From contig CBFFRO010000099.1 in the NCBI GenBank assembly GCA_965644265.1, positions 1 through 64,000 of the forward strand: a DNA stretch of 64,000 bases, given 5' to 3'. How positions within the stretch are numbered: the first letter of the stretch is position 1; each line of letters begins with the position of its first letter. Position numbers and translations under genes: made by a program. The stretch is from Glycera tridactyla (lineage: Eukaryota). The notes below the pieces were generated by a model that saw only the letters and a list, made by a program, of their open reading frames with translations, searched no databases and was not told the origin of the DNA. Below, piece after piece: positions 2,650 through 51,415 of this stretch.

Positions 2650-4007
2650 TACATGTATATATCCTGTATGCAGACTTCAAGCGAGGGAGTCAATGACAGA
2701 CACCTGATTTGGCAAGAATGAATATTCGGCAGAATGTGATATGCCAGATCTGTGACAATCTTTCCATACCAATGCCTCTGCCTAGGGATAGAATTTTCAA
2801 TAGCCTTTCGTAGTGTTAGGAATCGGTACCAATTTTGGGAATTGATTAATCAGAATTTATTTCGATTGATTAATCAATTATAATTGATGTTTAGTCAAGT
2901 GTCAAAGAAGACTGATTTGTAGCATGGAGGATGGTGACTGACATGACACGAGAAGTGAGAAGGCATGAATTCATCTGTAAAAAGAGTTAAAAGATGCTGG
3001 AGAGTGAAAGATAGACTAATAAATCTTGAAAAATGATAACGAGATCCAGATTATTCTAGAAAAAATACATTTAATGATGAAATCTGTCCTGCTGAAAATG
3101 AAAGCCAAAAAATCGATTCTGACAAAGTAACATTGATTAGTAGAATCGAAACCAAATTCGATTGATTCAATCGATTTCTGAGCGAAACGTCGCAAGACTT
3201 GCCTTTCGTCAGTGGTCAGAATTTCCCTTACACATTTGAAATAAGTTGTGTAGAGGACTGAGTGTTGAATCCAATTATGTGCTGCCACACACCGCTGACT
3301 CTGTAGTGTATCAAGAGCTGAAATAAAACTAGGTCCCGCTCAACTAAAAAACGATGTTGTTCCATCCATCATACTCCAACTAATTGTGTTGTCAAGAGTT
3401 GTTACAGTATACGAAGTGTTGATGCCAAGAGGATGTTATCACTGGCGATGGCAGAGCAGCCGATGGAAATAAAAATGATGAAATGATGCCTCATATTCAG
3501 TATGGAAATAGGGATTGTTCATCATCATCATCATTAGTGCTATCATCATTATTGTTAACATTAGTTATCATTATGATTATAACAAGTATTTCTGCTTCAG
3601 TCATCCTCGTGAAGGGGGACAGCTTCCGTCGCAGAAATTGATCATTAGTATCATTACCTTTATTATCATTATTACAGGGATGTTATTGCTCCATGGATCT
3701 GAAGATTTCTGGGGTTTTTTGTCACGAGTGCAGCACTCCATGCATGGGGCGGAAAAGAGCAATATGTGCTGATTATTTTGGATTTTAGATCATGAAAATT
3801 TAACCAGAATTGATGGAGATAGAACACAGATTTTGTATGCAGTCATAGTAGCCATGAGTTGGCAGCTGGGGCTTTCCTGGTCAATGAAATCTTGGTGAAA
3901 AGCACCACGGGTCAGGTTTTCGGGGGTTTTGGTTGTGAACGAATTACATCCGTGCTATTACCATTGTAACAGCTGTAATTATAATTTTCATCATTATCAT
4001 CATTTTC

Positions 4008-5201: not shown

Positions 5202-5938
5202 TATATTGATAATGGATACCACTGATGGGAGAAAGCTAGCATCAGAGAGGGAGGAAATCAGTTCTATATTATTTCTGATTTTTCAACAGGTATTTGGATT
5301 CACCAGATAGAGCCATCATCATATCATTATGTTCTGGAAGCATACATATCATCGACATGAACTGACTGTCCTGCATTTGTTCCAGTTCACATTCATCTGA
5401 TGTACATAAAAGACAGTCTTACATCTGTCACTCAAGTTTTGGAAATGAGAAGAAAAGTCACATATTTTGATAAGGATTGTTACGCCAAAGCAATATGAAT
5501 TGTGAAAGAGCAATAGCTTTTTTGATGAATATGGTTGTGCGCATTTTTATATGGTAATGAAGAGAACTATTGCAGTGACTGGTGGAGCAGAACTTTCGTG
5601 GATTTATATGAAGAAATAGTTTGTATGCGACCATCTAAAGAGAGTGACTGGTGTTTATACATTTCACAGGATTATATATGACAGTTTTTGATATATTGTG
5701 AGTTCCGAGGCGTTTTGATTCCTGTAATGCTTTTGATATTCCACGCTGTTGACTGTATCGGAGAGTGACTGGATAACTTTCACTGCGATTGAAGAACTTT
5801 TGCTCGGTTGAGGATCACGATTCAAGATGGCGGATTACCCTGTGGACGACGTGGAGAGTGTGACGTTGTTGGGGGTGGTGACGACGGTGACGTCAGGTAA
5901 TGTTACTAATACGACAGGTTTTGCTGGTGGTGTTGCAG

Positions 5939-6064
5939 ATGCACGTGTGGAGCATATCGCGCGGGCGGGGTGGTTCATCGGGATGATGTGCGCCATTCTC
6001 TTCCTCCTCCTCATCCTTCTCATCGTCTGTCTCATCAAACGCAATCGAGGAGGCAAATACCCAG
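5939..6064 (+). CDS. Nrg: L1CAM-family (neuroglian/NrCAM-like) transmembrane exon; 5' boundary uncertain (alternatives 5897, 5918)
   Basis: Encodes (D)[41 protein letters not shown], the GWFIG TM helix and KRxxGGKY juxtamembrane motif of L1 proteins; TACTAAT branch-like site at 5904-5910; CAG acceptor at 5936-5938; phase-1 donor CAG|GTAACG at 6064/6065. Confidence 0.93.
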
Positions 6065-7521: not shown

Positions 7522-7609
7522 TGTATGAGAAAGAGAAGCTACGAGCGCAGGATCCCAACTATCCTAACCGCGACGACGAAGAAGGCGGCTTCGGCGAATA
7601 CACGAGAAC
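7522..7609 (+). CDS. Nrg: L1CAM-family first cytoplasmic exon (88 nt, phase 1 to 2)
   Basis: TTTTTGCTATCAG acceptor and AC|GTAAGT donor; continues the TM exon in frame as VYEKEKLRAQDPNYPNRDDEEGGFGEYTR(T), matching the L1-family GGKYxV...FxEY pattern. Confidence 0.95.
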
Positions 7610-10216: not shown

Positions 10217-12243
10217 ATTGCAATACTAGACTGATACTGGGAATTTTTATGTTTATCATCATGTGGAATTGTATTTGTGTTACTCTGCATGATCATTATC
10301 GTAGGATATATGTTGTACCTTGCTATCCAAACTCGCACATTCACTTTGGCCCTAGACTCCTATGTTTGGATCAGGTGAAATGCGGTGCCCCACACCTCAG
10401 AAATGTGATTGCTCCACAGATCTGCAGATTTCTACATTTATTCGGGGAAATGTTACCTATGATAGAGTAGAGTGTTCATGCTATTGAATACTATGGTTTT
10501 AAGATCCTGAAGTTCTGATCGTAATCTGTCAAGTTGGAGCACAGCATATGCAGATGACTTGAGACATCTGCCATTTCTGTAGTCATACATTGTTCTTAGG
10601 CCATCATCTCTTGTGAAAATAGACTAGCCTGAAGGCCTGATGGAACAAAAATGTTTTATCAGTGCCAAAGCCATTCATCCAAATCACTTTGGATGAAATA
10701 TAGAAATCTTCCACACCTGGTAAATTGAAGGTTTTTCTCCAAAGGGCCTAAATAGCTTCCAGCGGATGAAATATTCCCTGTTTCAAAAACACTTAAATGG
10801 TTTTTTGATTATGTTCTACTTCAAAGAACAGGTGAATAATATTCAAGAAATCCAATGATTTCTGAAAATGTAATTCATACATTTCGATGATGTATCATGA
10901 GACATAGTTCTGTCTAATATTCAAGTGTTTTGGGCATTTCCAACCTTACAGCCATATATTCTTGCTTTTATCACATGGATTAGGAGAGAAATTGTCAAAA
11001 AGTAGTTGTCATCCAGTATCACATGCAATACTCAACACTCGATACTACACTGAAAATGTCACATCCATGTGTTAAAGACCCCAACCGTGAACCTTCAATG
11101 CTCATTGGGTCCATGTGGCCGTTCGTCTGGACATATGGGTTATGATTCAAAATGGTGGCCTACCTCGTAATAATCAAATGTTGAGAGGGTCAAAAAAATC
11201 TGGGCCAGTGGACCCATAGTAGAGGATATTGATGGGCCAAAAGGGCAAAAAGGGGGTCAATATAGCATGAGTCCCCTACCTGAGCGGTCGGAACAATGAT
11301 ATCACACGTGATATCACTTCACCCGCGATCCCAAGAGTGTGATATCATCGATCAGACCGTTCGGGGTGGAGATTCATGCATTCATGCCACACTCAAACTA
11401 CTGTCTTCCTTCCAAATTCTGGTTCTCAGTGTAAAGTGCCTTGACAATAAGCATCCGCCATGTTGGTTTACCTTCCATGCTCACTGGTACCCCATCTAGC
11501 TGCACATGAGTTGATATGATCGACAGAAGCTAGGTTACCAGTCGGCTGGTGAACAGCAAAAATAGTCCGGACAATACTTCCCGGTACGGGAGTATTTCAA
11601 GTGATAATACATACCACTTTAAAACATAGAAAACCACACATGTGTGGTATAATGGCCCGTCAATAATTAGAATGGCACTGATATGACGGAGAAACCCCAG
11701 AGTTGAGAAACTGGAAAGTTGAAATCTCAGGCCGTCTTGAATGTTTGTAGTAACAACTTTTCTTGTAGTGTTGTAGTTTTGTCGTCAGTGATTCATTTTT
11801 ATATCGCTTTCTTTCTCTTGTTTTCTTTCCAGGCCATCCAAAGTGTGAGTGTCCAGCACAATATATGTCTCGTCCTCCATTAAGACTGATGGCCAGCCCT
11901 ATTTTAATTTCTATTCTAATTGCCGTGTGAATCATAATCCGATCCTCCCCCGACCTCTTACAGCTTGTTTGCGGTGTCCTGGATTGCATGCGCATTGATA
12001 GCCATTAAACTGGGCCCAGTATTTGATAAGAGCTGCATTATGTGCACTTTTGATGTCGGTCAGGTTTCAGTTCTGGAACCTTTCACTGCATAATTCCATG
12101 TTTGCCAACTGCCAGTGGATTTAGACAAGCTGCTTCTGTCAAGCTCTTAATTGCATGCAGCTCAGAAGTCAAGTTAACAAGAGTTGTTCAGGGCAAAATT
12201 GGCAGGGAGCATTCATTGTGTGTTGGATTAGTCATACCATCGT

Positions 12244-18800: not shown

Positions 18801-19158
18801 GTACAATTCTTTTCTGATGGCTGTCAGAATCCTGATCTGAATTTTGACAGCAAAAAACTGTGAGGTGTTATTGCACCATCAATCTGATGATAAAGATGAG
18901 TCTTGTTGTCAAAGATACTCTGTAGATTGAACATATTTTGGAACTCTCCATGTTCCGTTGCCTCGGGAGATGTAGGGCGTGCTGCAGATTGGCCACCTGG
19001 TCCGATGTTATTGTTTATGTGGTCGTTGCATGAGCTTGTCTAGATGTCACTTATTAGATGAGACATAACTTACTTTGTGTGCATGTTGTGTTTTTGTTTT
19101 ATGTTTGCCTTTGATTGCCGCTGCTCTTCTTGACTGTTGTGCACCGTGAATTCATCAG

Positions 19159-19173
19159 TTATATGCCTCTATT
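19159..19173 (+). CDS. Candidate 15-nt microexon encoding YMPL
   Basis: ~94-nt AG-free T/TG-rich zone with several TGC; CAG acceptor; GTAAGT donor; phase 2-2 in frame; TGCATG at 19371 and 19379. Confidence 0.75.
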
Positions 19174-19926: not shown

Positions 19927-21491
19927 GTGTGTTCATTTGTACATGCAAGTGTCTGCGCATGTATGCTTGTGTATGCATGAGTGTTCCTGTGTCTGGCTGA
20001 ATGTGGGCCTTGCTGTCGTACCGTACCAAAGTGTCCATCATAACCATCCCATCCGTGTATTGTGCATTCCCGAATATACAGTCGTTGAAATTTCAGTTCT
20101 TATCATCAGTTGCCCACATATTTTTTTTTCTCAAAAAACGCACATCATTTTGACTCCTCATCGGGTTCTCCCTAGATTGGTAGATTTCCGCTCATAGACT
20201 TTCGATAAAAATCCCGTAGTGTTTCCAGCAGCTATCGTTACCACTTCTGTTGGATTAACATCACCCTCTAATATTCTCACTCCCTGCCATTTTTCTATCA
20301 AATTTTGTCAGATTCCATGTTATAGTTATGGAGTATTGCCCATTTTTTTCCCCATTATACACCACGGAACAATACAAAGTGTTTTACATTTTTGTGACCT
20401 CTCATAGATATGCGATGGGCAAGACTACAGGAAGAGATCCGAATTGATCTGCGATTCATAACGGACTATTCCATCAAGCAATATGAGGGGAGGGAGGGGT
20501 CAGGGTTGGAACAATTCTAACCCCCTACCCTATATCCTGAATTATTTGGCACCCCTGATTCAGAATTTGCATTCACCGACCGAGCCAACTGTTGATATCT
20601 TTGCATTACAGTGGTCAATGATCTCCTTCCCCAATTCTGAATGCGATGGATTGACATCAATCTCCTAGCCCCGAATCCTGATTTTTGCAGCACCCTCAGA
20701 TTAAATCTGTTGGTAACTCCCCAGATTTCGGATCGGCTGTCAACTGCCACCCGCACATTTTCAAATAGAATAGCCCTGGCATAGATCACCATTCACCGAT
20801 TCCATCTACCTGTGCGAGCTGCTCGCTAATTTCAAAACCATGAATGTAAACAACCAATCATGTCACAAACATGATTATAAATATAGATCAAATATTTATG
20901 GTCCACAATTTGAAGTGAAATACGAAGCAAATCCATTCAAGAATGCCTTGCTTCAGTTTCCATTCTAGTTATTTCATCCCTTAACTACCTCAAAGCCTAA
21001 GTTTACGATCCTGGCTTCATACAACATTTTTTTGTCTCCGGACAATTGGTCTGGAAATCATGAACACTTTTTGTTGGATATGAAGTGGCTGACCAATCCC
21101 CAAAGAGCACTTTTTGAGATGCTATGCTGTGAAAGATTCATTGGACGATAATGCACAGTGGATAAGCCAATGGCCAAGTCCCTACCTGCTTGCTGCAGAC
21201 TGAAAAGTCATCCCGCAGCAAAAGTTCTTCTGGATGGCTAGAGCTGGAGCTATTGAAGTCGCCTTTCTGTGGTGTTTAGATGTTGCAGACTAGCTTGTTC
21301 AGCTTCATATCCCACAGAAAAAGAAGCCCAGGATAGTATACTCAGGCATTAAATTTAGCGTCATATCATTTTTTTTGCGCTGAATATGCTGCTGTTGAAT
21401 GAGATAACGCGCTGCTCTGCTGATTTTGTTTGCATTGTGTTTTTGTGTCACCATAATTTTGTTGACATTTTTTGTACATCTTTGTTTTTAG

Positions 21492-21512
21492 GCCCTACAT
21501 GGAACTAAAGAG
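21492..21512 (+). CDS. Candidate 21-nt microexon encoding PYMELK(S)
   Basis: ~86-nt AG-free T-rich zone; TTTTTAG acceptor; GAG|GTAAAA donor; phase 2-2 in frame. Confidence 0.75.
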
Positions 21513-21567
21513 GTAAAACTCATGCTCCTGTTTTTGATTGAACTAGCAGTTGTCCCTACCTTCCTGC

Positions 21568-21625
21568 TGGTGGTGGTGGCAGCTCTGGTGGAGGTGGTGG
21601 TGGTGGTGTTAGTGATGGTGGTGGT
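21568..21625. repeat. (GGT)n-rich tract
   Basis: Directly visible. Confidence 0.9.
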
Positions 21626-24248: not shown

Positions 24249-27200
24249 TACTTTTTTCTGCGATATGTGACTGCCGGTCTTAGATTTGACGGATGTTACT
24301 GGTATTTATCACTGTTTGTGTGTGTTCCCCTTAGCTGCTGTATACATACACGACGCCTTGCTCTACGATCTGTCCTTTTGGATCAATCCATCTCATTAGC
24401 ATGCATGATCATGCCTGCCAATGCCCAATAGTGGCTATTTGAAAGGATAAGAGACATTATACAAAAATCCATGATCATTGAATAAATATATCTCATTCTA
24501 AGGCACTAATCCCAAGTGAATTATGGTGATTTTATTAAACATCGAGATATTTTTGCTTTTTTGCCACCAATCAATCATGTAATTGCAGAGATGCTAACTA
24601 TTATATTTTTGTCGTACCGATGACTTCGGTCAAAATTTTGGCATCTGTTACATCAAATAATGAATTTTAGTTCTTATTTGGTCGTTGCTAATATTGATAT
24701 GTCCATCAGTATTGTTAGGACATGACATCATTATGATTTTTGGCTTATCTAAAGTTGGAAATCCTGTAAAATTTTCACTAACGTGAAATTTTATTTGTAT
24801 TTGATTTAATTCAGAAAGAGCAGGTACAAAATGGACCATATTTCCCTGAATAGTGATCATGAAAGTATCTCACGAGATGGGATACTTCTACATTGCAAAC
24901 TTTCTGGTTCACATCATCCAGTACTCAGGGTTTGTGAGAGTGATGACTACTGGGGACGGAGCGTCAAACTTGTATTGATCAGGAACACATGGCATAGGTA
25001 ATCTTTTTATTTGATCATGCCATGAAACATCAATCAAACTACATACAAAGGAATTAAAAAGTATGATCATATCCCGCTTTGACCTTGATATGTGTTAGAG
25101 AAGAGCCTGTGAACTCAGGGACCTTTACAGATGGTAGAGCATCGGTGGTCACCTATGTATATAGCCATCCCCTAGCCCTTGACTAACAACTGTGTTTGCA
25201 GACTTCATCCATATTTGTTTGTTACTGACTTCATCCCCCTTTCTTGACTTCCCCCCCCCCCTCCCCTCTTGTATATTTGGGTGTTTGTTTTGCATGGTTA
25301 ACCCTTTCATTTTCTTGTTTCCATCCACAGAGTACTTCACACCCACCAGTGCAATTCATTTGTTGTCGGGGGGGAGTGTCTTGTCAATTTCGATGGCACT
25401 CATTGTTGTTTTAGCGAGGTGCAAAATGGCTCATCCTGATTTGTGGTCTTTGCAATCATTTATTTAAGCTATTCCATCAATCTTGAAATTGATGAAATGG
25501 ACTGAGTTTGAGATTTGTTGCTAGTCTGGTATTTCCTCCTAAGTTTCCGTAGGGCCATCTTGGTATACCTATTCAAAGAATGCATCGTGACTGCTGAAGT
25601 CTGAACTGGAAGAATTAGTGAAATTAGTTGGGTAACACTGACAGACAAACAGACAGAAAGGCCGACAGGCAGACTGTCACTGACAGATGGGGGGGGGGGG
25701 GGGAGCAATAGAAATTCAACAATATGTACATGGACCATAGATAAATCTGCGGATACCAATGCAGACTATAAATCTGTCTCCCGGAGACTGATTTATTCCG
25801 CATTTAGGACATAAAATAGCATTAGTAATTGTATAATGTATTCCCCGACGGTGTGGATCAGAGACAAAGTTTGATGTCCCTCACAACAGTTTGATAACAG
25901 AGATGCGATTGTCGTGCAGGTTCACAGATTTCCATGTACTTGTTCCTGATCAGAAATGCAGCCGGCCATACATATGAAAGAAAAGAAGGTTTCTCGCTGC
26001 TTATTTTGACTTTTAGATCATGGAAATCAGACCAGAATTAGCGGAGATAGAGGACAGAATTTGCAGGAGATATAACCGAGTCCTAGCAGCTGTTAGTTGA
26101 CAGGTATAGGGGCCGGCTTGATAAATTCTTGGAAATGATTGCCCCAGGTAGAATTTCAGGGTTTTCGGTTGTTTGCCAATCATATCCCTGTTTGCAGTTT
26201 CAGTATGAGATGGATATGTATCATGGATTAAGATAATCATGGAATTGAAAATTGTGCAGGAGTGTTTCTGTTTTGATATTAGTGGTAGTTGTATGAACTA
26301 TTCCAGTTAGAAATGACCGTCTTCCAGTGATATTTGAGCAATCTAGTAGAAGAGTTTTGCCATCATGATCTATAGTCTGGTACAAATAATGTCTTATGCA
26401 CCACATATAACTCCACCCAGGTTACTCAATGTTCACTCAACTAACAACCCACTCAACACTGGGCATCACCAGCACTGACAGCATAACCACACTCGTTCCA
26501 TTGTTTCATTCCTGAATAAGAGCGAACATATTTGTACCTAGACCCGGTAATCGGGGCAATACTGTAGATTAGGAGGGTGCATTGTCCACTAGAATTTTCA
26601 TGAAGTTTGGATGGCTCAGTCAAAGAAACGGCTCTCTTCTACGCAGAATTTCAGAAATCAGGGCTGAAATCGACAACAGGATACAAGATACCTGTTCCTA
26701 CCTAGACTATGTGTTTGGTCTCGCACTGGCAATTGAGGTCTCGAATCCATTAGAAGAAATGTATTCATATCTTAGAATGTAATTCGTACTTCCAATGGTC
26801 TATCATGAATAACTACCTCCCATTGCATTGCCATTTCAAAAGTGTATCAATTAGATATGATTGCATCCTTTAGAAGCCAGTGTATTTTGTTGATCAACCC
26901 AATCTGAATATGAATAATTTTCATGACTGATTTGATGTAGTGTGAGCTTATATCAAATATTGCCCTGCCCCGAGTCAGATTTGATTACCTTTTGATTCCT
27001 GAGTCATAGTTCCAAAAATTTGATGCAGAAGCTATTCCTGGAAATATTATGAAAGTGGTGTGGTACTGGTAGAAAATATAGAGTGTTGATATAATATTCG
27101 CAGGATCTGTCTGTGTGGTGCACGGCATGCCGTTCCATATGTAGTATGTGTAGCTGTCATACCTCTGCATGCAGACTAACAATTCTGCAAACCTGTCCTG

Positions 27201-27596
27201 AACTGTTCGTTGTTCATGTACGACTTTATGAAAGTCATCAAGTTCTGTATAGTATAGAGTCTCCATTGAGTGTTCTGCACTTGACCATTGTGGTATTCAC
27301 AATCGTTGAACATCATGATTATAAGTCCAATTGGTGGTACACAAAACTAAAGAAGAGTTAACGAGAAATCGGATGTACTAGTTCTCTTTTTCAACCTTAA
27401 TCTCGCTTATAGGTGTGACTAGCTTGAATTTTTCGTTTATATGAGCACGTTGCAGATATAAATTCCATTCCAGTATTTGGCTGTTCGGTCCTACCACCAA
27501 TGTAGACAATATGAAGTCTGTGGTATAGTGAATACAACTTACCATGAAAAGATATAAAATATAATGAGTAGCTCCATCATATTGAAGCAGTCAATA

Positions 27597-27804
27597 GGCC
27601 TATTTGACTGGACAGTTTCCGTTGAGTGGGCATTGCAGGACTTAACGGTTGTAGCCCAGCCGGATGGGTTTTGTTTAACGAGTTCAACGTAGTCAAATTA
27701 CCGTTGAGATTCGTATGCAATGAAAAAGTGTTGGGTGCCACCTGAATACGAAAAGTGCTCAACAGCCTGGCCGTACTCAACGAAACTGACCAGTCTAATA
27801 GGCC
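27597..27804. mobile_element. MITE with ~30-bp TIR and TA TSD at the left edge of the tandem array
   Basis: GGCCTATTTGACTGGACAGTTTCCGTTGAGT versus reverse complement of right end GGCCTATTAGACTGGTCAGTTTCGTTGAGT; TA on both sides. Confidence 0.9.
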
Positions 27805-28214
27805 TATATACACTGTCCTCTGCTGTTGATATCGAAAGAATGCCCATTTCTTCATGAGCTGTACAACATGGACCCGATGAGATAGCTGAGGAATAGCTCT
27901 TGCGACAATGATGTTTGGAACAGCATCCAGACATGATGATGACGTCAAATTGCTTTTCATGTTTAGAGAGCCAACCAATTAGTTGCTACTTTTGCTTGTC
28001 TTTCTCATGATTATTTTTCATGATCGTGGTCTCTGCCCGATAGAACATGGATTGAATAAGAGACCGAATAGTGATCGCCATGTGAAGATTTGATGACTCA
28101 AGAGGAGCTGGCCTTCAAGTTGCAGGTCCTTTCTCATGCAGCGGTGCTTTTTGGGTAGTATGACCTTAGAAATGCTTTATATTCATGTGTGTGGTGTTTC
28201 TGATGTGTTTTCAG

Positions 28215-28437
28215 TGATGAGCCTGACTTCAAGAAGAGTCAAGGGTCCGTGGAGAGTGGTGGCCTGGGATCAATGGGCGGAAGCGACGAAGACAGTATGG
28301 CCGATTACGACACGGAGGTGGACCCGGGTAAGTTCAACGAGGACGGGTCCTTTATTGGCCAGTACGGCGGCAAGACGAAGAAAGAAGAGAAAGAGCCCGA
28401 TGCCGCCTCCCCGTCTGCACTCTCCACTTTTGTATAA
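28215..28437 (+). CDS. Nrg: L1CAM-family terminal coding exon, copy 1
   Basis: GTGTTTTCAG acceptor; phase 2 matches exon 7522-7609; encodes (T)DEPDFKKSQGSVESGGLGSMGGSDEDSMADYDTEVDPGKFNEDGSFIGQYGGKTKKEEKEPDAASPSALSTFV*, with DS(M)ADY and FNEDGSFIGQY L1 signatures and T-F-V PDZ ligand. Confidence 0.97.
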
Positions 28438-31400
28438 TACACCATCCACTCTGTGGCCCCCCTTGATATTATCGAGTGTCCGAAGCAGATGCTGTTTTCG
28501 TGGTTGAGTCTACATCAATGTATCTGCTTGCGTGGATGTGTGCCAGTGTGACAAAATGCTTGCAACCTGCTCCAGTGACATGTGCCAATCTAGACACAGA
28601 AACAAGTGCAATATGGAGGTCCGTTTCATTTCTGGAAGCTGCAGTCTTCATGGTCATTCGTGGTGGTTCAGAGGTCGACAAGCACCATTATTTTCCGTAG
28701 GAATCGAGAGATTGGAAGTGCCGGTTCATCAGATGGCTTCGAGATAATCGCTAGTGTTCCTTCGTTCATTGACCGTGAAAATATTTCAGGCATTTGTGAT
28801 AATGTAACAATGTCAGGTCATCTTGGTCAGAAGGTGCTAGCCAGTTTCGAATCGACAGGGATTGAGCAGCTCTCAGGGGACCTCCTGGACCTTCAAATCC
28901 ATCATGTGGGTTAAACCCCGAAATGTACTTGCCAGGACTGAATCTTCAAATCATTGAGCGAAAGAAAACATCACAGGAATCTGCAATGAACACTTAACCG
29001 GTGGCATGTGCTGGATTTGCTTCGTGCTGTTTTGACTCGTATTCAATTTCGTGTTTGTGTGCGTAACTTTAAGACGTCCTGGTCTGACAGAAGCTGGAGC
29101 AGTCATAGTCGGGGGGCAAGAGGTCAGCCCGTCTCATACGCAAACCAAAGGAAGCAGACATTACCAGATCTGAGATAGGAAAATGACTGATATTGGTCGA
29201 TGTTGGACCACGTAAAAATTTCTGCTATTCAAGGTGGACTTGTTAGGAGCATTGATGCTGTGTAGAAACGGCCGAGAGCAAAGCAAGTGACAATGCACCT
29301 TTAGTTGGCCTAAGAGTGAATTCTTAGCCATCGCTTGTTTTCTGCAAATCCTGGTGGTGAATGATGCTTCTTGTCAAGCATGCAGTGGTCGGTAGATGAT
29401 TGCATGCCTGCCAAGATACTCCAGGCATTGTCACCATGATTGGAAAAGAATTGATGTCCGGGAATTGACACTTTGGCCCTTTAGTTTTGATCTGACGTTT
29501 GCTTCATTGTGCATCTAGCATGGTTTCTGTTGATGAGTTATAGTATTTTGTTTGTGCTGAATAGGATCCCGAGTCATGGTATCAGCCACTCGTGTAACAG
29601 TGGCTGATTGTGCATGTATGGATGGTGGTGAATACTCATTCTTGGACCGTAGCTCAAGAAATTTCATGATTCGTTCCTATCCGATCTGTTAATTTTATGA
29701 TGAGGTATTCCCGAATGGGTGTACTTATATGTGTATACTTGACCACAAAATCCTCTCTGTTTGAGCAAGTAAATTCTTGACTTGCAAGCAATCTCTAGTT
29801 TCTCTTGAGATATGCTTTGATTATCTACTTCACTCCAGAACAGTGATGTTTGCATATTGTTTATCTGGAAGACAGTAAGGATCCTTGATGATATCTCTTT
29901 TTGATTTGACATGCAATCAAAACAACTATATTTAGATATACATTTGTCACTGGCATCTTGGTGTTCTATTCAGCACTCACGGAAAATATACTCACTATCA
30001 TATTTTTTGAAATAAAGTTGCCTTATATTTTTTGAAACTGTGCTTCAACTATGCATGTGGTACACACTTTAGTCAGATTTTGTTCCTGTATTAGCTTTAT
30101 GAAAGCGCCATCTAATGGTGGGACTGAGGAGAGATTAATTATGCTGCTTGGTCTAGAGATGGCGCTAGGTGTAGTCATGAGTCCATTATTTTCACTGGTC
30201 CCCCTATGTCTGTTTTCATGCCATGTGTGTATTTCACTGCCAAAACCCATCATCATACGTAGAACTGTACATAGACATTGTGAAGGTGTGTATGCAAGTG
30301 TGAGCTTGAGCGTGAGGGTATGCGTGCAATCGTGTGTGCTTGAGCATGTGTGTGAGTGATAGATGGGTGCTTGCATAATCACACTTACAGTACAGTGGCA
30401 ATATGGGCCATAGCTGAATCTTGCTTTTTAAACGTGCTATAAGATCACACCATTTGTTATTGTCACTTAGGAATAACCTCTATGGAATCGTGTAAGGTTG
30501 TAAGCAGCATAGTATCTCTAGAAGAGGGAGCATATCAGCTCGGTATGATGAAAGAAAATGCATCAAATCTGCATCAAGTTGACAGAATCAAAACCAAAGT
30601 TTACTCACTGCACAATCTGAGGGAACATCATAAGTAATAGTGGCAGATTTTGATGGATAAAGGCAAATGACTCTCGCACTGTTTTCTCTGTCTATGTCAA
30701 AAGTGGATTTCTCTTTTTGAATGATGAGTGAGATTGGAGAAACCAACCTGATGGAGAGAGAAGTGATAGTTTTGCAATGGGCCAGTTCAGGTGTGAAATC
30801 AACTGATCCACAAAGTGTATTAAAGAGAAATACTGGTCACAAATATGGGACTGGAATGTCAATCGCTGAAATGTGTATATTCGAACGATTACAGTGTTCA
30901 TAGCAGGACAAGACAGTCGATGAATAATATGGAATGTGCAGTTGTCCATGTATTATGTGAGTGTTGTGGGATATACAAGGGTATTGTTACTTGTTCTAAA
31001 TAATTCAAGTTGCAGTGAAATGTGTCTGCTTGCATCGCTGTCTTTTGATGACCTCGTGACATTCTCTGTCATGAGAGAACATAAGAGTTGACAACAGTTT
31101 CATATAACTTGCCATTGAAATTTATGACCAATTGCTAGCTGTATGTGGATTGGCGTGTACAAGTAAATGTCTGGTTAGGCGAAACAATTATCCTGATTAT
31201 TTATTAATGTTTTTTTGTTTCTCCTAATGATATTAAAATCGTAATTCAGTTCACTGTTGCATCACCATGGAAAGATGACATTTCAAAAGATTGATGATGA
31301 TGAATAGATGAACAGATAAATGCATATAGAAATAGATAAATCGAAGGACAGTTTGATGAAGATAGTCAGAAATTGTTTGTTTGGGATTTTTTTGTATCAT

Positions 31401-39626: not shown

Positions 39627-39849
39627 TGATGAGCCCGACTTCAAGAAGAGTCAAGGGTCCGTGGAGAGTGGTGGCCTGGGATCAATGGGCGGAAGCGACG
39701 AAGACAGTATGGCCGATTACGACACGGAGGTGGACCCGGGTAAGTTCAATGAGGACGGGTCCTTTATTGGCCAGTACGGTGGCAAGACGAAGAAAGAAGA
39801 GAAAGAGCCCGATGCCGCCTCCCCGTCTGCACTCTCCACTTTTGTATAA
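39627..39849 (+). CDS. Nrg: Duplicated terminal exon, copy 2 (intact; protein identical to copy 1)
   Basis: Acceptor intact; three synonymous differences from copy 1; usage unknown. Confidence 0.8.
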
Positions 39850-51192: not shown

Positions 51193-51415
51193 TGATGAGC
51201 CCGACTTCAAGAAGAGTCAAGGGTCCATGGAGAGTGGTGGCCTGGGATCAATGGGCGGAAGCGATGAAGACAGTATGGCCGATTACGACACGGAAGTGGA
51301 CCCGGGTAAGTTCAACGAGGACGGGTCCTTTATTGGCCAGTACGGCGGCAAGACGAAGAAAGAAGAGAAAGAGCCCGATGCCGCCTCCCTGTCTGCACTC
51401 TCCACTTTTGTATAA
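51193..51415 (+). CDS. Nrg: Duplicated terminal exon, copy 3 (intact; V>M and P>L relative to copy 1)
   Basis: Acceptor and stop intact; GTG>ATG and CCG>CTG plus three synonymous differences from copy 1. Confidence 0.8.

What the first reader, a model, noticed from the sequence alone, without database searches (positions are those of the whole stretch)
21492..21512. 21-nt microexon adding a second YxxL motif (PYMELK)
~86-nt AG-free T-rich zone, TAG acceptor, GAG|GTAAAA donor, symmetric phase 2-2. That two independently spotted short exons both encode Y-M-x-L is unlikely for random intronic hits and hints at duplication or convergent selection.
Basis: partly seen in the sequence, partly recalled or inferred. 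Interest (0 to 1): 0.85.

Follow-up and report, generated by a model that had tools for sequence, protein, structure and literature searches.

The report
Real conserved microexon in annelid L1CAM tail
The 21-base stretch is a genuine tiny exon, present in messenger RNA and conserved across annelid worms. It adds a tyrosine-based YMEL motif to the inner tail of an L1-type nerve-cell adhesion protein, at the spot where vertebrate L1 genes carry their RSLE mini-exon.

Summary
The 21-nt element at 21492-21512 is a real exon.

- **RNA evidence.** Assembled RNA contigs of four public runs (two studies) read CCATCCAAAGT|GCCCTACATGGAACTAAAGAG|TGATGAG. The exon is therefore spliced directly onto the last coding exon (28215) of an annelid-type L1CAM/neuroglian gene.
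- **Conservation.** Homologous 21-24-nt exons with intact AG/GT and frame lie in the same intron of Capitella teleta (PYMELAQ), Lamellibrachia satsuma (PYKELP) and three unnamed relatives. The surrounding introns do not align. Transcripts of one relative exist with and without the exon.
- **Likely function.** The exon sits where vertebrate L1-family genes carry the 12-nt RSLE exon. Like RSLE, it creates the only Yxx-hydrophobic signal (YMEL) in the tail. An AP-2 endocytosis/sorting signal is the best-supported function, but this is inferred, not shown. The motif is incomplete in two lineages.
- **Not supported.** A "second" YxxL motif and an origin by exon duplication.

This is a new variant of a known kind and moderately interesting. 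The scan had separately noted the tandem last-exon repeat on another piece of this genome.

The parts
5812..6064 (+). Transmembrane/juxtamembrane exon of the L1-family gene. It ends ...KRNRGGKYP + G| with donor gtaacg. The exon start was not determined; 5812 is the start of the open frame.
   Evidence: Read directly; frame and junction checked.
7522..7609 (+). 88-nt cytoplasmic exon coding (V)YEKEKLRAQDPNYPNRDDEEGGFGEYTR(T). It ends AC| with donor gtaagt.
   Evidence: The same exon ending ...GGFGEYTRT is seen in annelid relatives.
11833..11844 (+). 12-nt microexon GCCATCCAAAGT (codes PSK+V), with a ttccag acceptor behind a 95%-pyrimidine tract and a gtgagt donor. In the RNA contigs it lies directly upstream of the 21-nt exon.
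   Evidence: Best-scoring candidate of the intron scan. Its last 11 letters precede the 21-nt exon in the loose ends of all four runs. The string is unique in the window. Sequence.
19159..19173 (+). It is not present in the dominant RNA contigs.
   Evidence: 94-nt AG-free tract, gtaagt donor. Absent from the loose-end consensus. No homologue found in the Capitella or Lamellibrachia introns.
21404..21489 (+). 86-nt AG-free, T-rich tract upstream of the acceptor. The branch point presumably lies in it.
21492..21512 (+). The 21-nt microexon GCCCTACATGGAACTAAAGAG, coding (T/V)PYMELK(S).
   Evidence: Spliced onto 28215 in contigs of runs X1, X2, X5 and X8. Unique in the window. Homologues in five other loci.
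21513..21518 (+). Donor GTAAAA. GTAA is invariant in all six species.
   Evidence: Alignment A2.
21568..21625 (+). GGT-repeat / GU-rich intronic tract 56-113 nt after the donor. It is a candidate splicing enhancer, by inference only.
   Evidence: Nine TGGTGG words here against 0.84 per kb in the window. A similar tract lies at +88 to +142 in Lamellibrachia, a weaker one in L003, and none is clear in L004 or L006.
28215..28437 (+). Last coding exon (copy 1): (S/T)DEPDFKK...FNEDGSFIGQY...ALSTFV, then stop. It carries the Bravo_FIGEY domain, and the 3'UTR runs at least to 29710.
   Evidence: PF13882, E 1.1e-11. RNA contigs cover 28213-29710 and fit copy 1 best.
39627..39849 (+). Second tandem copy of the last coding exon (an ~11.4-kb repeat unit).
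51193..51415 (+). Third tandem copy of the last coding exon.

Best explanation
SHOWN: window 21492-21512 is a genuine 21-nt coding exon of an annelid-type L1CAM/neuroglian-family gene on the + strand. In mRNA it is flanked upstream by a 12-nt exon (11833-11844) and downstream by the last coding exon (28215). Together the two tiny exons insert PSKV-PYMELK-S between ...FGEYTRT and DEPDFKK... in the cytoplasmic tail. The exon is conserved in position, frame and splice sites across annelids, with near-constant length (21 or 24 nt). In at least one relative it is a cassette that is either used or skipped. INFERRED: it works like the vertebrate RSLE mini-exon of L1CAM, NrCAM and neurofascin. That is, it lies in the corresponding tail intron, upstream of the FIGQY ankyrin-binding region, and supplies the only tyrosine-based Yxx-hydrophobic signal of the tail (YMEL). 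Such a signal is the kind of motif that the mu2 subunit of the AP-2 adaptor binds for clathrin-mediated endocytosis and polarised sorting, and that tyrosine phosphorylation can switch off. Unlike RSLE, the annelid exon brings its own tyrosine. My odds: real, conserved exon 0.95; alternative rather than constitutive in this species 0.7; acts as an AP-2-type sorting signal 0.45.
For: RNA: in all four runs laid (two studies) the contig covering the last exon and 3'UTR begins to fit at 28213. Its overhang reads CCATCCAAAGTGCCCTACATGGAACTAAAG. No contig lies on intron 26715-27500, so the runs behave as RNA. Both strings are unique in the window, at 11834 and 21492. Conservation: Capitella teleta L008:8290-8313 PYMELAQ; Lamellibrachia satsuma L001:3070-3090 PYKELP; L003:2841-2861 PYKELP; L004:9284-9304 SYMDAK; L006:7790-7813 PRTELKY. 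In alignment A2 the invariant columns fall almost entirely in the exon, the acceptor AG and the donor GTAA. The window and Capitella encode an identical PYMEL with a doubly synonymous Leu codon, CTA against TTG. Transcripts of relatives: P0181/P0240 carry PYMPLDSTPPK at this junction. P0235-P0238 carry PRMELKY, while P0145 of the same 90% cluster skips it. Gene identity: Bravo_FIGEY PF13882 in the last exon, and the tail aligns to L1-family proteins from many phyla. Motif: the skipped tail has no Yxx[LIMFV]; the observed tail has one, YMEL. Vertebrate parallel: YRSL binds AP-2, and RSLE is an alternative, neuron-specific exon (PMC2956685). [quoted passage not shown] A vertebrate L1 tail in my own hits reads FGEYRSLESDNEE (P0082). 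This gives the same Y-x-x-L-x-S-D layout as the annelid Y-M-E-L-K-S-D.
Against: No binding, trafficking or tissue data exist for this protein. The motif is not universal: L004 has YMDA (no bulky residue at +3), and the PRMELKY/PRTELKY lineage has Arg in place of the Tyr. Selection may therefore act on something else, such as the P-x-x-E/D-L-K core. Only assembled contigs could be laid. They drop minor isoforms, so neither skipping nor neural specificity is shown in this species. The runs are labelled 'RNA?' by guess. No microexon is annotated at this site in amphioxus, hemichordate, mollusc, nemertean or arthropod isoforms. Homology with RSLE is therefore unproven, and parallel origin is the more likely reading. 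A UGC motif close to the 3' splice site, typical of eMIC/SRRM-dependent microexons (PMC8797185), is missing here; the nearest is at -61.
Confidence: 0.55

Rival explanations
1. The exon is real, but it does not act through AP-2. It could be a phosphotyrosine docking site: with the 12-nt exon in front, the junction codon GT|G gives Val, and the peptide VPYMEL fits the ITIM consensus [S/I/V/L]xYxx[I/V/L]. It could be an ERM/adaptor contact. Or it could simply be a spacer that changes the distance between the membrane-proximal part and the FIGQY ankyrin site.
For: VPYMEL arises only in the 12+21 form that is actually seen in RNA. Tyr or the +3 Leu is lost in two lineages, while the length, P1, the acidic residue and the L/K positions persist. 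The vertebrate RSLE region is also reported as an ERM-binding and 14-3-3-binding region (title cited; PMC2956685).
Against: Four of six lineages keep Y-x-x-L exactly. The closest known precedent in the same protein family, at the corresponding tail intron, is an AP-2 signal. In relatives the exon follows Thr rather than Val, so the ITIM-like context is not conserved.
Confidence: 0.3
2. The exon is real but constitutive in this species. It would be an ordinary small coding exon, not a regulated switch.
For: All four runs from two studies show only the including form, and no contig with a different overhang at 28215 was listed.
Against: Contigs drop rare variants, so absence is not shown (header). 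In a relative, both the including and the skipping form were assembled. Several other annelid transcripts and gene models lack the exon (P0144, P0146, P0149, P0151). The 86-nt AG-free tract and weak GTAAAA donor are features of regulated exons.
Confidence: 0.25
3. It is a chance splice-site look-alike in an intron. The matching RNA would then come from elsewhere, such as a paralogue or a processed copy.
For: The intron offers 697 frame-compatible AG...GT candidates. Run kinds are guessed, not recorded.
Against: The overhang matches the window letter for letter over 19 + 11 bases at two unique places. The contigs are 99.5% or more identical to last-exon copy 1. The exon is conserved with its splice sites in five other genomes. 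A relative's transcripts contain the homologous insert.
Confidence: 0.03

Closest known systems
RSLE mini-exon (12 nt) of vertebrate L1CAM, NrCAM and neurofascin
   Same: Same protein family (Bravo_FIGEY tail). The insertion point is 3 residues beyond the one after the conserved FGEY and before an S/T-D-acidic stretch. It preserves the frame. It creates the only Yxx-hydrophobic motif of the tail, with the same Y-x-x-L-x-S-D layout: YRSLESD against YMELKSD.
   Different: It is 21 nt (24 or 36 in relatives), not 12. It carries its own tyrosine instead of borrowing the Y of FGEY, and three extra residues (TRT) follow FGEY. Here it is spliced together with a further 12-nt exon. Its sequence is unrelated apart from the ...CTN-NAG-AG end. 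Neuron specificity and AP-2 binding were not tested. No such exon is annotated in the intervening phyla.
eMIC/SRRM (Srrm234, SRRM3/4)-dependent neural microexon programme of bilaterians
   Same: The length is under 28 nt. There is a long AG exclusion zone and a weak 5' splice site. The gene is a neural adhesion gene, and the exon is conserved within its phylum.
   Different: There is no UGC close to the 3' splice site in this species, and the long AG-free zone is not conserved. Dependence on the eMIC domain and neural restriction were not tested. Fly and mammal programmes share only four exon positions (PMC8797185), so an annelid-vertebrate shared position would be unusual.
Drosophila neuroglian Nrg180/Nrg167 isoforms (recalled from memory, not checked here)
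   Same: An invertebrate L1-type gene whose cytoplasmic tail is changed by alternative splicing.
   Different: The fly uses alternative 3' terminal exons, not an internal microexon. No Yxx-hydrophobic cassette is known there, and the arthropod tails in my hits show no insert after HEY.

Membership tests
L1CAM family (L1/NrCAM/neurofascin/CHL1/neuroglian) | Cytoplasmic Bravo_FIGEY domain with the FIGQY ankyrin-binding motif | tested here: met
   PF13882, E 1.1e-11, 46 bits against a cut-off of 23.8, on window:28216-28437. FNEDGSFIGQY is read directly.
L1CAM family (L1/NrCAM/neurofascin/CHL1/neuroglian) | Single-pass membrane protein with 6 Ig + FN3 ectodomain | tested here: inconclusive
   The window holds only the TM exon and the tail. 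Full-length relatives with the same tail (P0240, P0144) have Ig and fn3 domains. The ectodomain of this gene lies outside the window.
RSLE-type sorting-signal mini-exon of L1-family genes | Frame-preserving cassette between the FGEY exon and the S-D-acidic exon of the tail | tested here: met
   21 nt, enters after 2 codon bases and leaves after 2, between ...FGEYTRT and DEPDFKK. Use and skipping are both seen in a relative. The vertebrate intron phase is recalled from memory, not checked.
RSLE-type sorting-signal mini-exon of L1-family genes | Inclusion creates a Yxx-hydrophobic motif that the tail otherwise lacks | tested here: met
   Skipped tail: no Yxx[LIMFV]. Observed tail: YMEL. The motif is incomplete in 2 of 6 lineages.
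RSLE-type sorting-signal mini-exon of L1-family genes | 12 nt coding R-S-L-E, with the tyrosine supplied by the upstream exon | tested here: not met
   21 nt coding PYMELK, with the tyrosine inside the exon. It is therefore an analogue or possible distant homologue, not a member in the strict sense.
RSLE-type sorting-signal mini-exon of L1-family genes | Neuron-specific inclusion | not testable with these tools
   Only contigs of runs without a tissue record could be laid, and the single read-laying run was used.
RSLE-type sorting-signal mini-exon of L1-family genes | Binds AP-2 mu2 and drives clathrin-mediated endocytosis | not testable with these tools
   This needs a binding or trafficking assay.
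eMIC/SRRM-dependent neural microexons | Very short exon with a long AG exclusion zone | tested here: met
   21 nt with an 86-nt AG-free tract, which is in the top 1.3% of this intron. The tract is only 17-22 nt in four relatives.
eMIC/SRRM-dependent neural microexons | UGC motif close to the 3' splice site | tested here: not met
   The nearest TGC is at -61 in the window. L003 has TGC at -5 and -19.
eMIC/SRRM-dependent neural microexons | Inclusion depends on the eMIC domain of Srrm234 | not testable with these tools
   This needs knock-down or knock-out RNA data.

The most novel reading that the evidence does not exclude
The annelid PY(M/K)EL exon and the vertebrate RSLE exon descend from one ancestral bilaterian microexon. 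On this reading, splicing control of a tyrosine-based sorting signal in the L1 tail predates the protostome-deuterostome split and was lost, or has been missed in annotation, in the other phyla. They share the same intron and the same Y-x-x-L-x-S-D layout, and both exons end ...CTN-NAG-AG before |T-GA(Y). It would be one of very few microexons shared in position between protostomes and vertebrates.
Probability: 0.2. Interest if true: 0.7.

Novelty: new variant of a known kind. Interest (0 to 1): 0.5.

Why it matters
L1-family adhesion molecules steer axon growth. In vertebrates a 12-nt neuron-specific exon decides whether L1 carries its AP-2 endocytosis signal. Here annelids place a different tiny exon at the corresponding intron, and it again creates the tail's only tyrosine-based signal. 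This is either an ancient microexon or a clear case of parallel evolution of the same splicing-controlled switch.

That bears on an open question: how far neural microexon programmes are shared between phyla. Fly and mammal share only four exon positions (PMC8797185).

It also has a practical side. The exon is missing from the Capitella gene model, and a 12-nt companion exon was unreported. Annelid L1 tails are therefore mis-annotated, and the isoforms can now be tested directly in tractable annelids.

Tried and rejected
1. My first splice filter (pyrimidine tract 0.75 or more, donor score 7 or more) rejected the true exon and kept only the 12-nt exon. Simple scores are poor judges of microexons.
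2. Three relatives' loci could not be read because their sample files were too large (P0096, P0123, P0124). The nemertean gene is not on record.
3. L005 (GCA_029979725.1) has an intron of only about 780 nt there, and I found no homologue in it.
4. I looked for the insert in annotated isoforms of amphioxus (14 proteins), hemichordates, bivalves, gastropods, octopus, nemertean, horseshoe crab and insects. None had it.
5. I tested the duplication idea by comparing 300-nt flanks of the 15-nt and 21-nt candidates. They share only short T-rich words.
6. I looked for homologues of the 12-nt exon in relatives. L004 has only an 8-letter match, in a different frame, so I did not accept it.
7. The long AG-free tract and the GGT-rich downstream tract are not conserved across all species.
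8. Paper searches for an annelid or invertebrate L1 microexon found nothing. Cheng et al. 2005 is not held.
9. A single read laying stretch of 6,000 letters cannot hold both 21492 and 28215. I therefore relied on the loose-end consensus at 28213, which shows only 30 letters. The junction 7609>11833 was not seen directly.

Full report
**What is at the coordinates.** The window reads ctttgttttt-ag|GCCCTACATGGAACTAAAGAG|gtaaaa at 21490-21518. The acceptor is TAG, the donor is GAG|GTAAAA, and the length is 21 nt. An 86-nt AG-free, T-rich tract (21404-21489) lies upstream. The exon enters and leaves the reading frame after two codon bases and codes (T)PYMELK(S).

**The gene.** The + strand of the window carries the 3' end of an L1CAM-family gene.
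- A transmembrane exon ends at 6064 (...KRNRGGKYP).
- An 88-nt exon at 7522-7609 ends ...EEGGFGEYTR + AC|.
- A last coding exon at 28215-28437 reads |T GAT GAG... and codes DEPDFKK...FNEDGSFIGQY...ALSTFV, then stop.
- The last exon matches Pfam Bravo_FIGEY (PF13882, E 1.1e-11).
- Its closest named relatives are annelid proteins: Lamellibrachia satsuma P0007 and Capitella teleta P0144. More distant L1/neuroglian/NrCAM proteins come from many phyla.
- The last exon and about 11.4 kb downstream of it are present in three tandem copies that differ by about 1%.

**Is it more than chance from sequence alone?** Only weakly.
- The 20.6-kb intron offers 697 frame-compatible, stop-free AG...GT candidates.
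- Nine pass a modest splice filter, and two encode Y-M-x-L.
- AG-free tracts of 86 nt or more precede 1.3% of AGs in the intron.
- My first, stricter filter actually rejected this exon.

**RNA evidence.**
- Eight public runs hold 86-94% of the sampled words of the last exon and 3'UTR.
- I laid the assembled contigs of four of them (two studies, two organism labels) on 26715-29714.
- In every run one contig covers 28213-29710 at 99.5% identity or more, and nothing lies on intron 26715-27500.
- The overhang before 28213 reads CCATCCAAAGTGCCCTACATGGAACTAAAG.
- The last 19 letters of that overhang, plus the AG that the aligner absorbed at 28213-28214, are the 21-nt exon.
- The first 11 letters are not the end of exon 7609, and they are not the 15-nt YMPL candidate. 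They are the end of GCCATCCAAAGT at 11833-11844. This is a 12-nt exon with a ttccag acceptor behind a 95%-pyrimidine tract and a gtgagt donor.
- Both strings occur once in the window.
- The dominant mRNA tail therefore reads ...FGEYTRT-PSKV-PYMELK-S-DEPDFKK....
- The contigs fit last-exon copy 1 better than copies 2 or 3.
- Limits: these are contigs, which drop minor isoforms. The run kind is a guess. Only 30 overhang letters are shown, so the junction 7609>11833 was not seen directly.

**Conservation.** Homologous exons lie in the same intron of five other genomes.

| Locus | Species or source | Exon with splice sites | Peptide |
|---|---|---|---|
| L008:8290-8313 | Capitella teleta | ttag\|ACCCTACATGGAATTGGCCCAAAG\|gtaact | PYMELAQ |
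| L001:3070-3090 | Lamellibrachia satsuma | tag\|GCCCTACAAGGAATTGCCGAG\|gtaaaa | PYKELP |
| L003:2841-2861 | unnamed ENA assembly | (not printed; donor gtaaaa) | PYKELP |
| L004:9284-9304 | unnamed ENA assembly | tag\|CTCCTACATGGACGCTAAGAG\|gtaaat | SYMDAK |
| L006:7790-7813 | unnamed ENA assembly | 24 nt | PRTELKY |

- In the six-way alignment the invariant columns fall almost entirely in the exon, the acceptor AG and the donor GTAA. The flanks do not align.
- The window and Capitella encode an identical PYMEL while using CTA and TTG for Leu. This is the signature of selection on the peptide.
- The Capitella gene model P0144 lacks the exon.

**Transcripts of relatives.**
- Metatranscriptome and Logan transcripts P0181/P0240 read GEYTRT-PYMPLDSTPPK-SDQPEYKK. 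The 36-nt insert begins GCCATACATG and ends AAAGAG, like the window exon.
- Within one 90%-identity cluster, P0145 skips the exon (GEYTRT|EEPDPHKK). P0235-P0238 include PRMELKY. This validates the 24-nt genomic candidate of L006 and shows that the exon is a true cassette in that species.

**How it most likely works.**
- The skipped tail contains no Yxx[LIMFV] motif. The observed tail contains exactly one, YMEL.
- In vertebrate L1, the 12-nt RSLE exon follows the conserved FGEY and creates YRSL. That motif binds AP-2 for clathrin-mediated endocytosis. It is neuron-specific and is silenced by Src phosphorylation of the tyrosine (PMC2956685).
- The same device is used across the vertebrate L1 family (PMC7821500).
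- A vertebrate tail among my own hits reads FGEYRSLESDNEE (P0082). The layout Y-x-x-L-x-S-D is the same as the annelid Y-M-E-L-K-S-D.
- I therefore think the exon supplies an AP-2-type sorting or endocytosis signal. This step is inferred.
- Against it: the Tyr or the +3 hydrophobic residue is missing in two of six lineages (YMDA; PRMELKY).
- One rival is that, in the observed 12+21 form, the junction codon makes Val. The resulting VPYMEL also fits an ITIM-like phosphotyrosine docking consensus.
- Regulation: the long AG-free tract and weak donor resemble eMIC/SRRM-dependent microexons (PMC8797185). However, no UGC lies near the 3' splice site here, and the long tract is not conserved.
- A GGT-rich tract 56-113 nt downstream recurs in Lamellibrachia and more weakly in L003. 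It may be an intronic enhancer.

- 'Second YxxL': the 15-nt YMPL candidate is not in the dominant mRNA. I found no homologue of it in Capitella or Lamellibrachia.
- 'Duplication': the flanks of the two candidates share nothing beyond T-rich words. The relative's PYMPL insert shows that M-P-L and M-E-L variants of one exon exist. The resemblance could therefore reflect the same selective pressure, but it does not show duplication.

**Comparison with what is known, and novelty.**
- I found no paper on an L1-family tail microexon in annelids or any invertebrate.
- No such insert appears in annotated isoforms of amphioxus, hemichordates, molluscs, a nemertean or arthropods.
- It is not an RSLE exon in the strict sense, because the length, the sequence and the source of the tyrosine all differ. 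It does the same thing at the corresponding intron, three residues further downstream. I file it as a new variant of a known kind.
- Parallel origin is the more likely history. Deep homology is the more novel reading, at about 0.2.

**Verdict.** The exon is real (0.95), conserved and expressed. Its function as a tyrosine-based sorting signal is plausible (0.45). Interest is moderate.

Noticed in passing
It is spliced directly in front of the 21-nt exon in all four runs. No convincing homologue was found in the relatives' introns or transcripts.
   Followed up: partly
window 27640-64000 (copies start 27640, 39056, 50623): The last coding exon, the 3'UTR and downstream DNA form an ~11.4-kb tandem repeat with three copies in the window, about 99% identical in the exon/UTR part. 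All copies encode nearly the same tail. RNA contigs fit copy 1 best. Further ~2.7-kb sub-repeats lie at 58-64 kb.
   Followed up: partly
window 21568-21625; L001 about 3178-3232: A GGT-repeat tract (nine TGGTGG words) lies 56-113 nt downstream of the microexon donor. It recurs at a similar distance in Lamellibrachia and more weakly in L003. It is a possible intronic splicing enhancer.
   Followed up: partly
junction 11844|21492: The split codon GT|G makes Val, so only the 12+21 combination yields VPYMEL, which fits the ITIM consensus [S/I/V/L]xYxx[I/V/L]. The context is not conserved in relatives, which have Thr there.
   Followed up: partly
L008:8290-8313 (Capitella teleta KB306825.1): The Capitella gene model ELT99433.1 (P0144) omits a well-formed 24-nt exon (PYMELAQ) in its last intron. 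This is an annotation gap.
   Followed up: yes
P0015 vs P0114 (Octopus bimaculoides neuroglian): The two database versions differ by a 3-residue insert in the same part of the tail (NDSKNDENG against NDSKKKKSDENG). This may be another tail microexon in a cephalopod.
   Followed up: no
P0153 vs P0225/P0226 (Lineus longissimus neuroglian-like X2 vs X1/X3): The nemertean isoforms use two different, paralogous terminal exons, ending ALSTFV or TTFKGT. Duplicated last exons of this gene are therefore used as alternatives in another phylum. This is worth comparing with the tandem last-exon copies here.
   Followed up: no
window 19065-19158: The 15-nt YMPL candidate has a 94-nt AG-free tract with several TGC motifs and a perfect gtaagt donor. 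It looks at least as exon-like as the proven 21-nt exon, yet it is absent from the dominant contigs. It could be a minor or tissue-restricted exon.
   Followed up: partly
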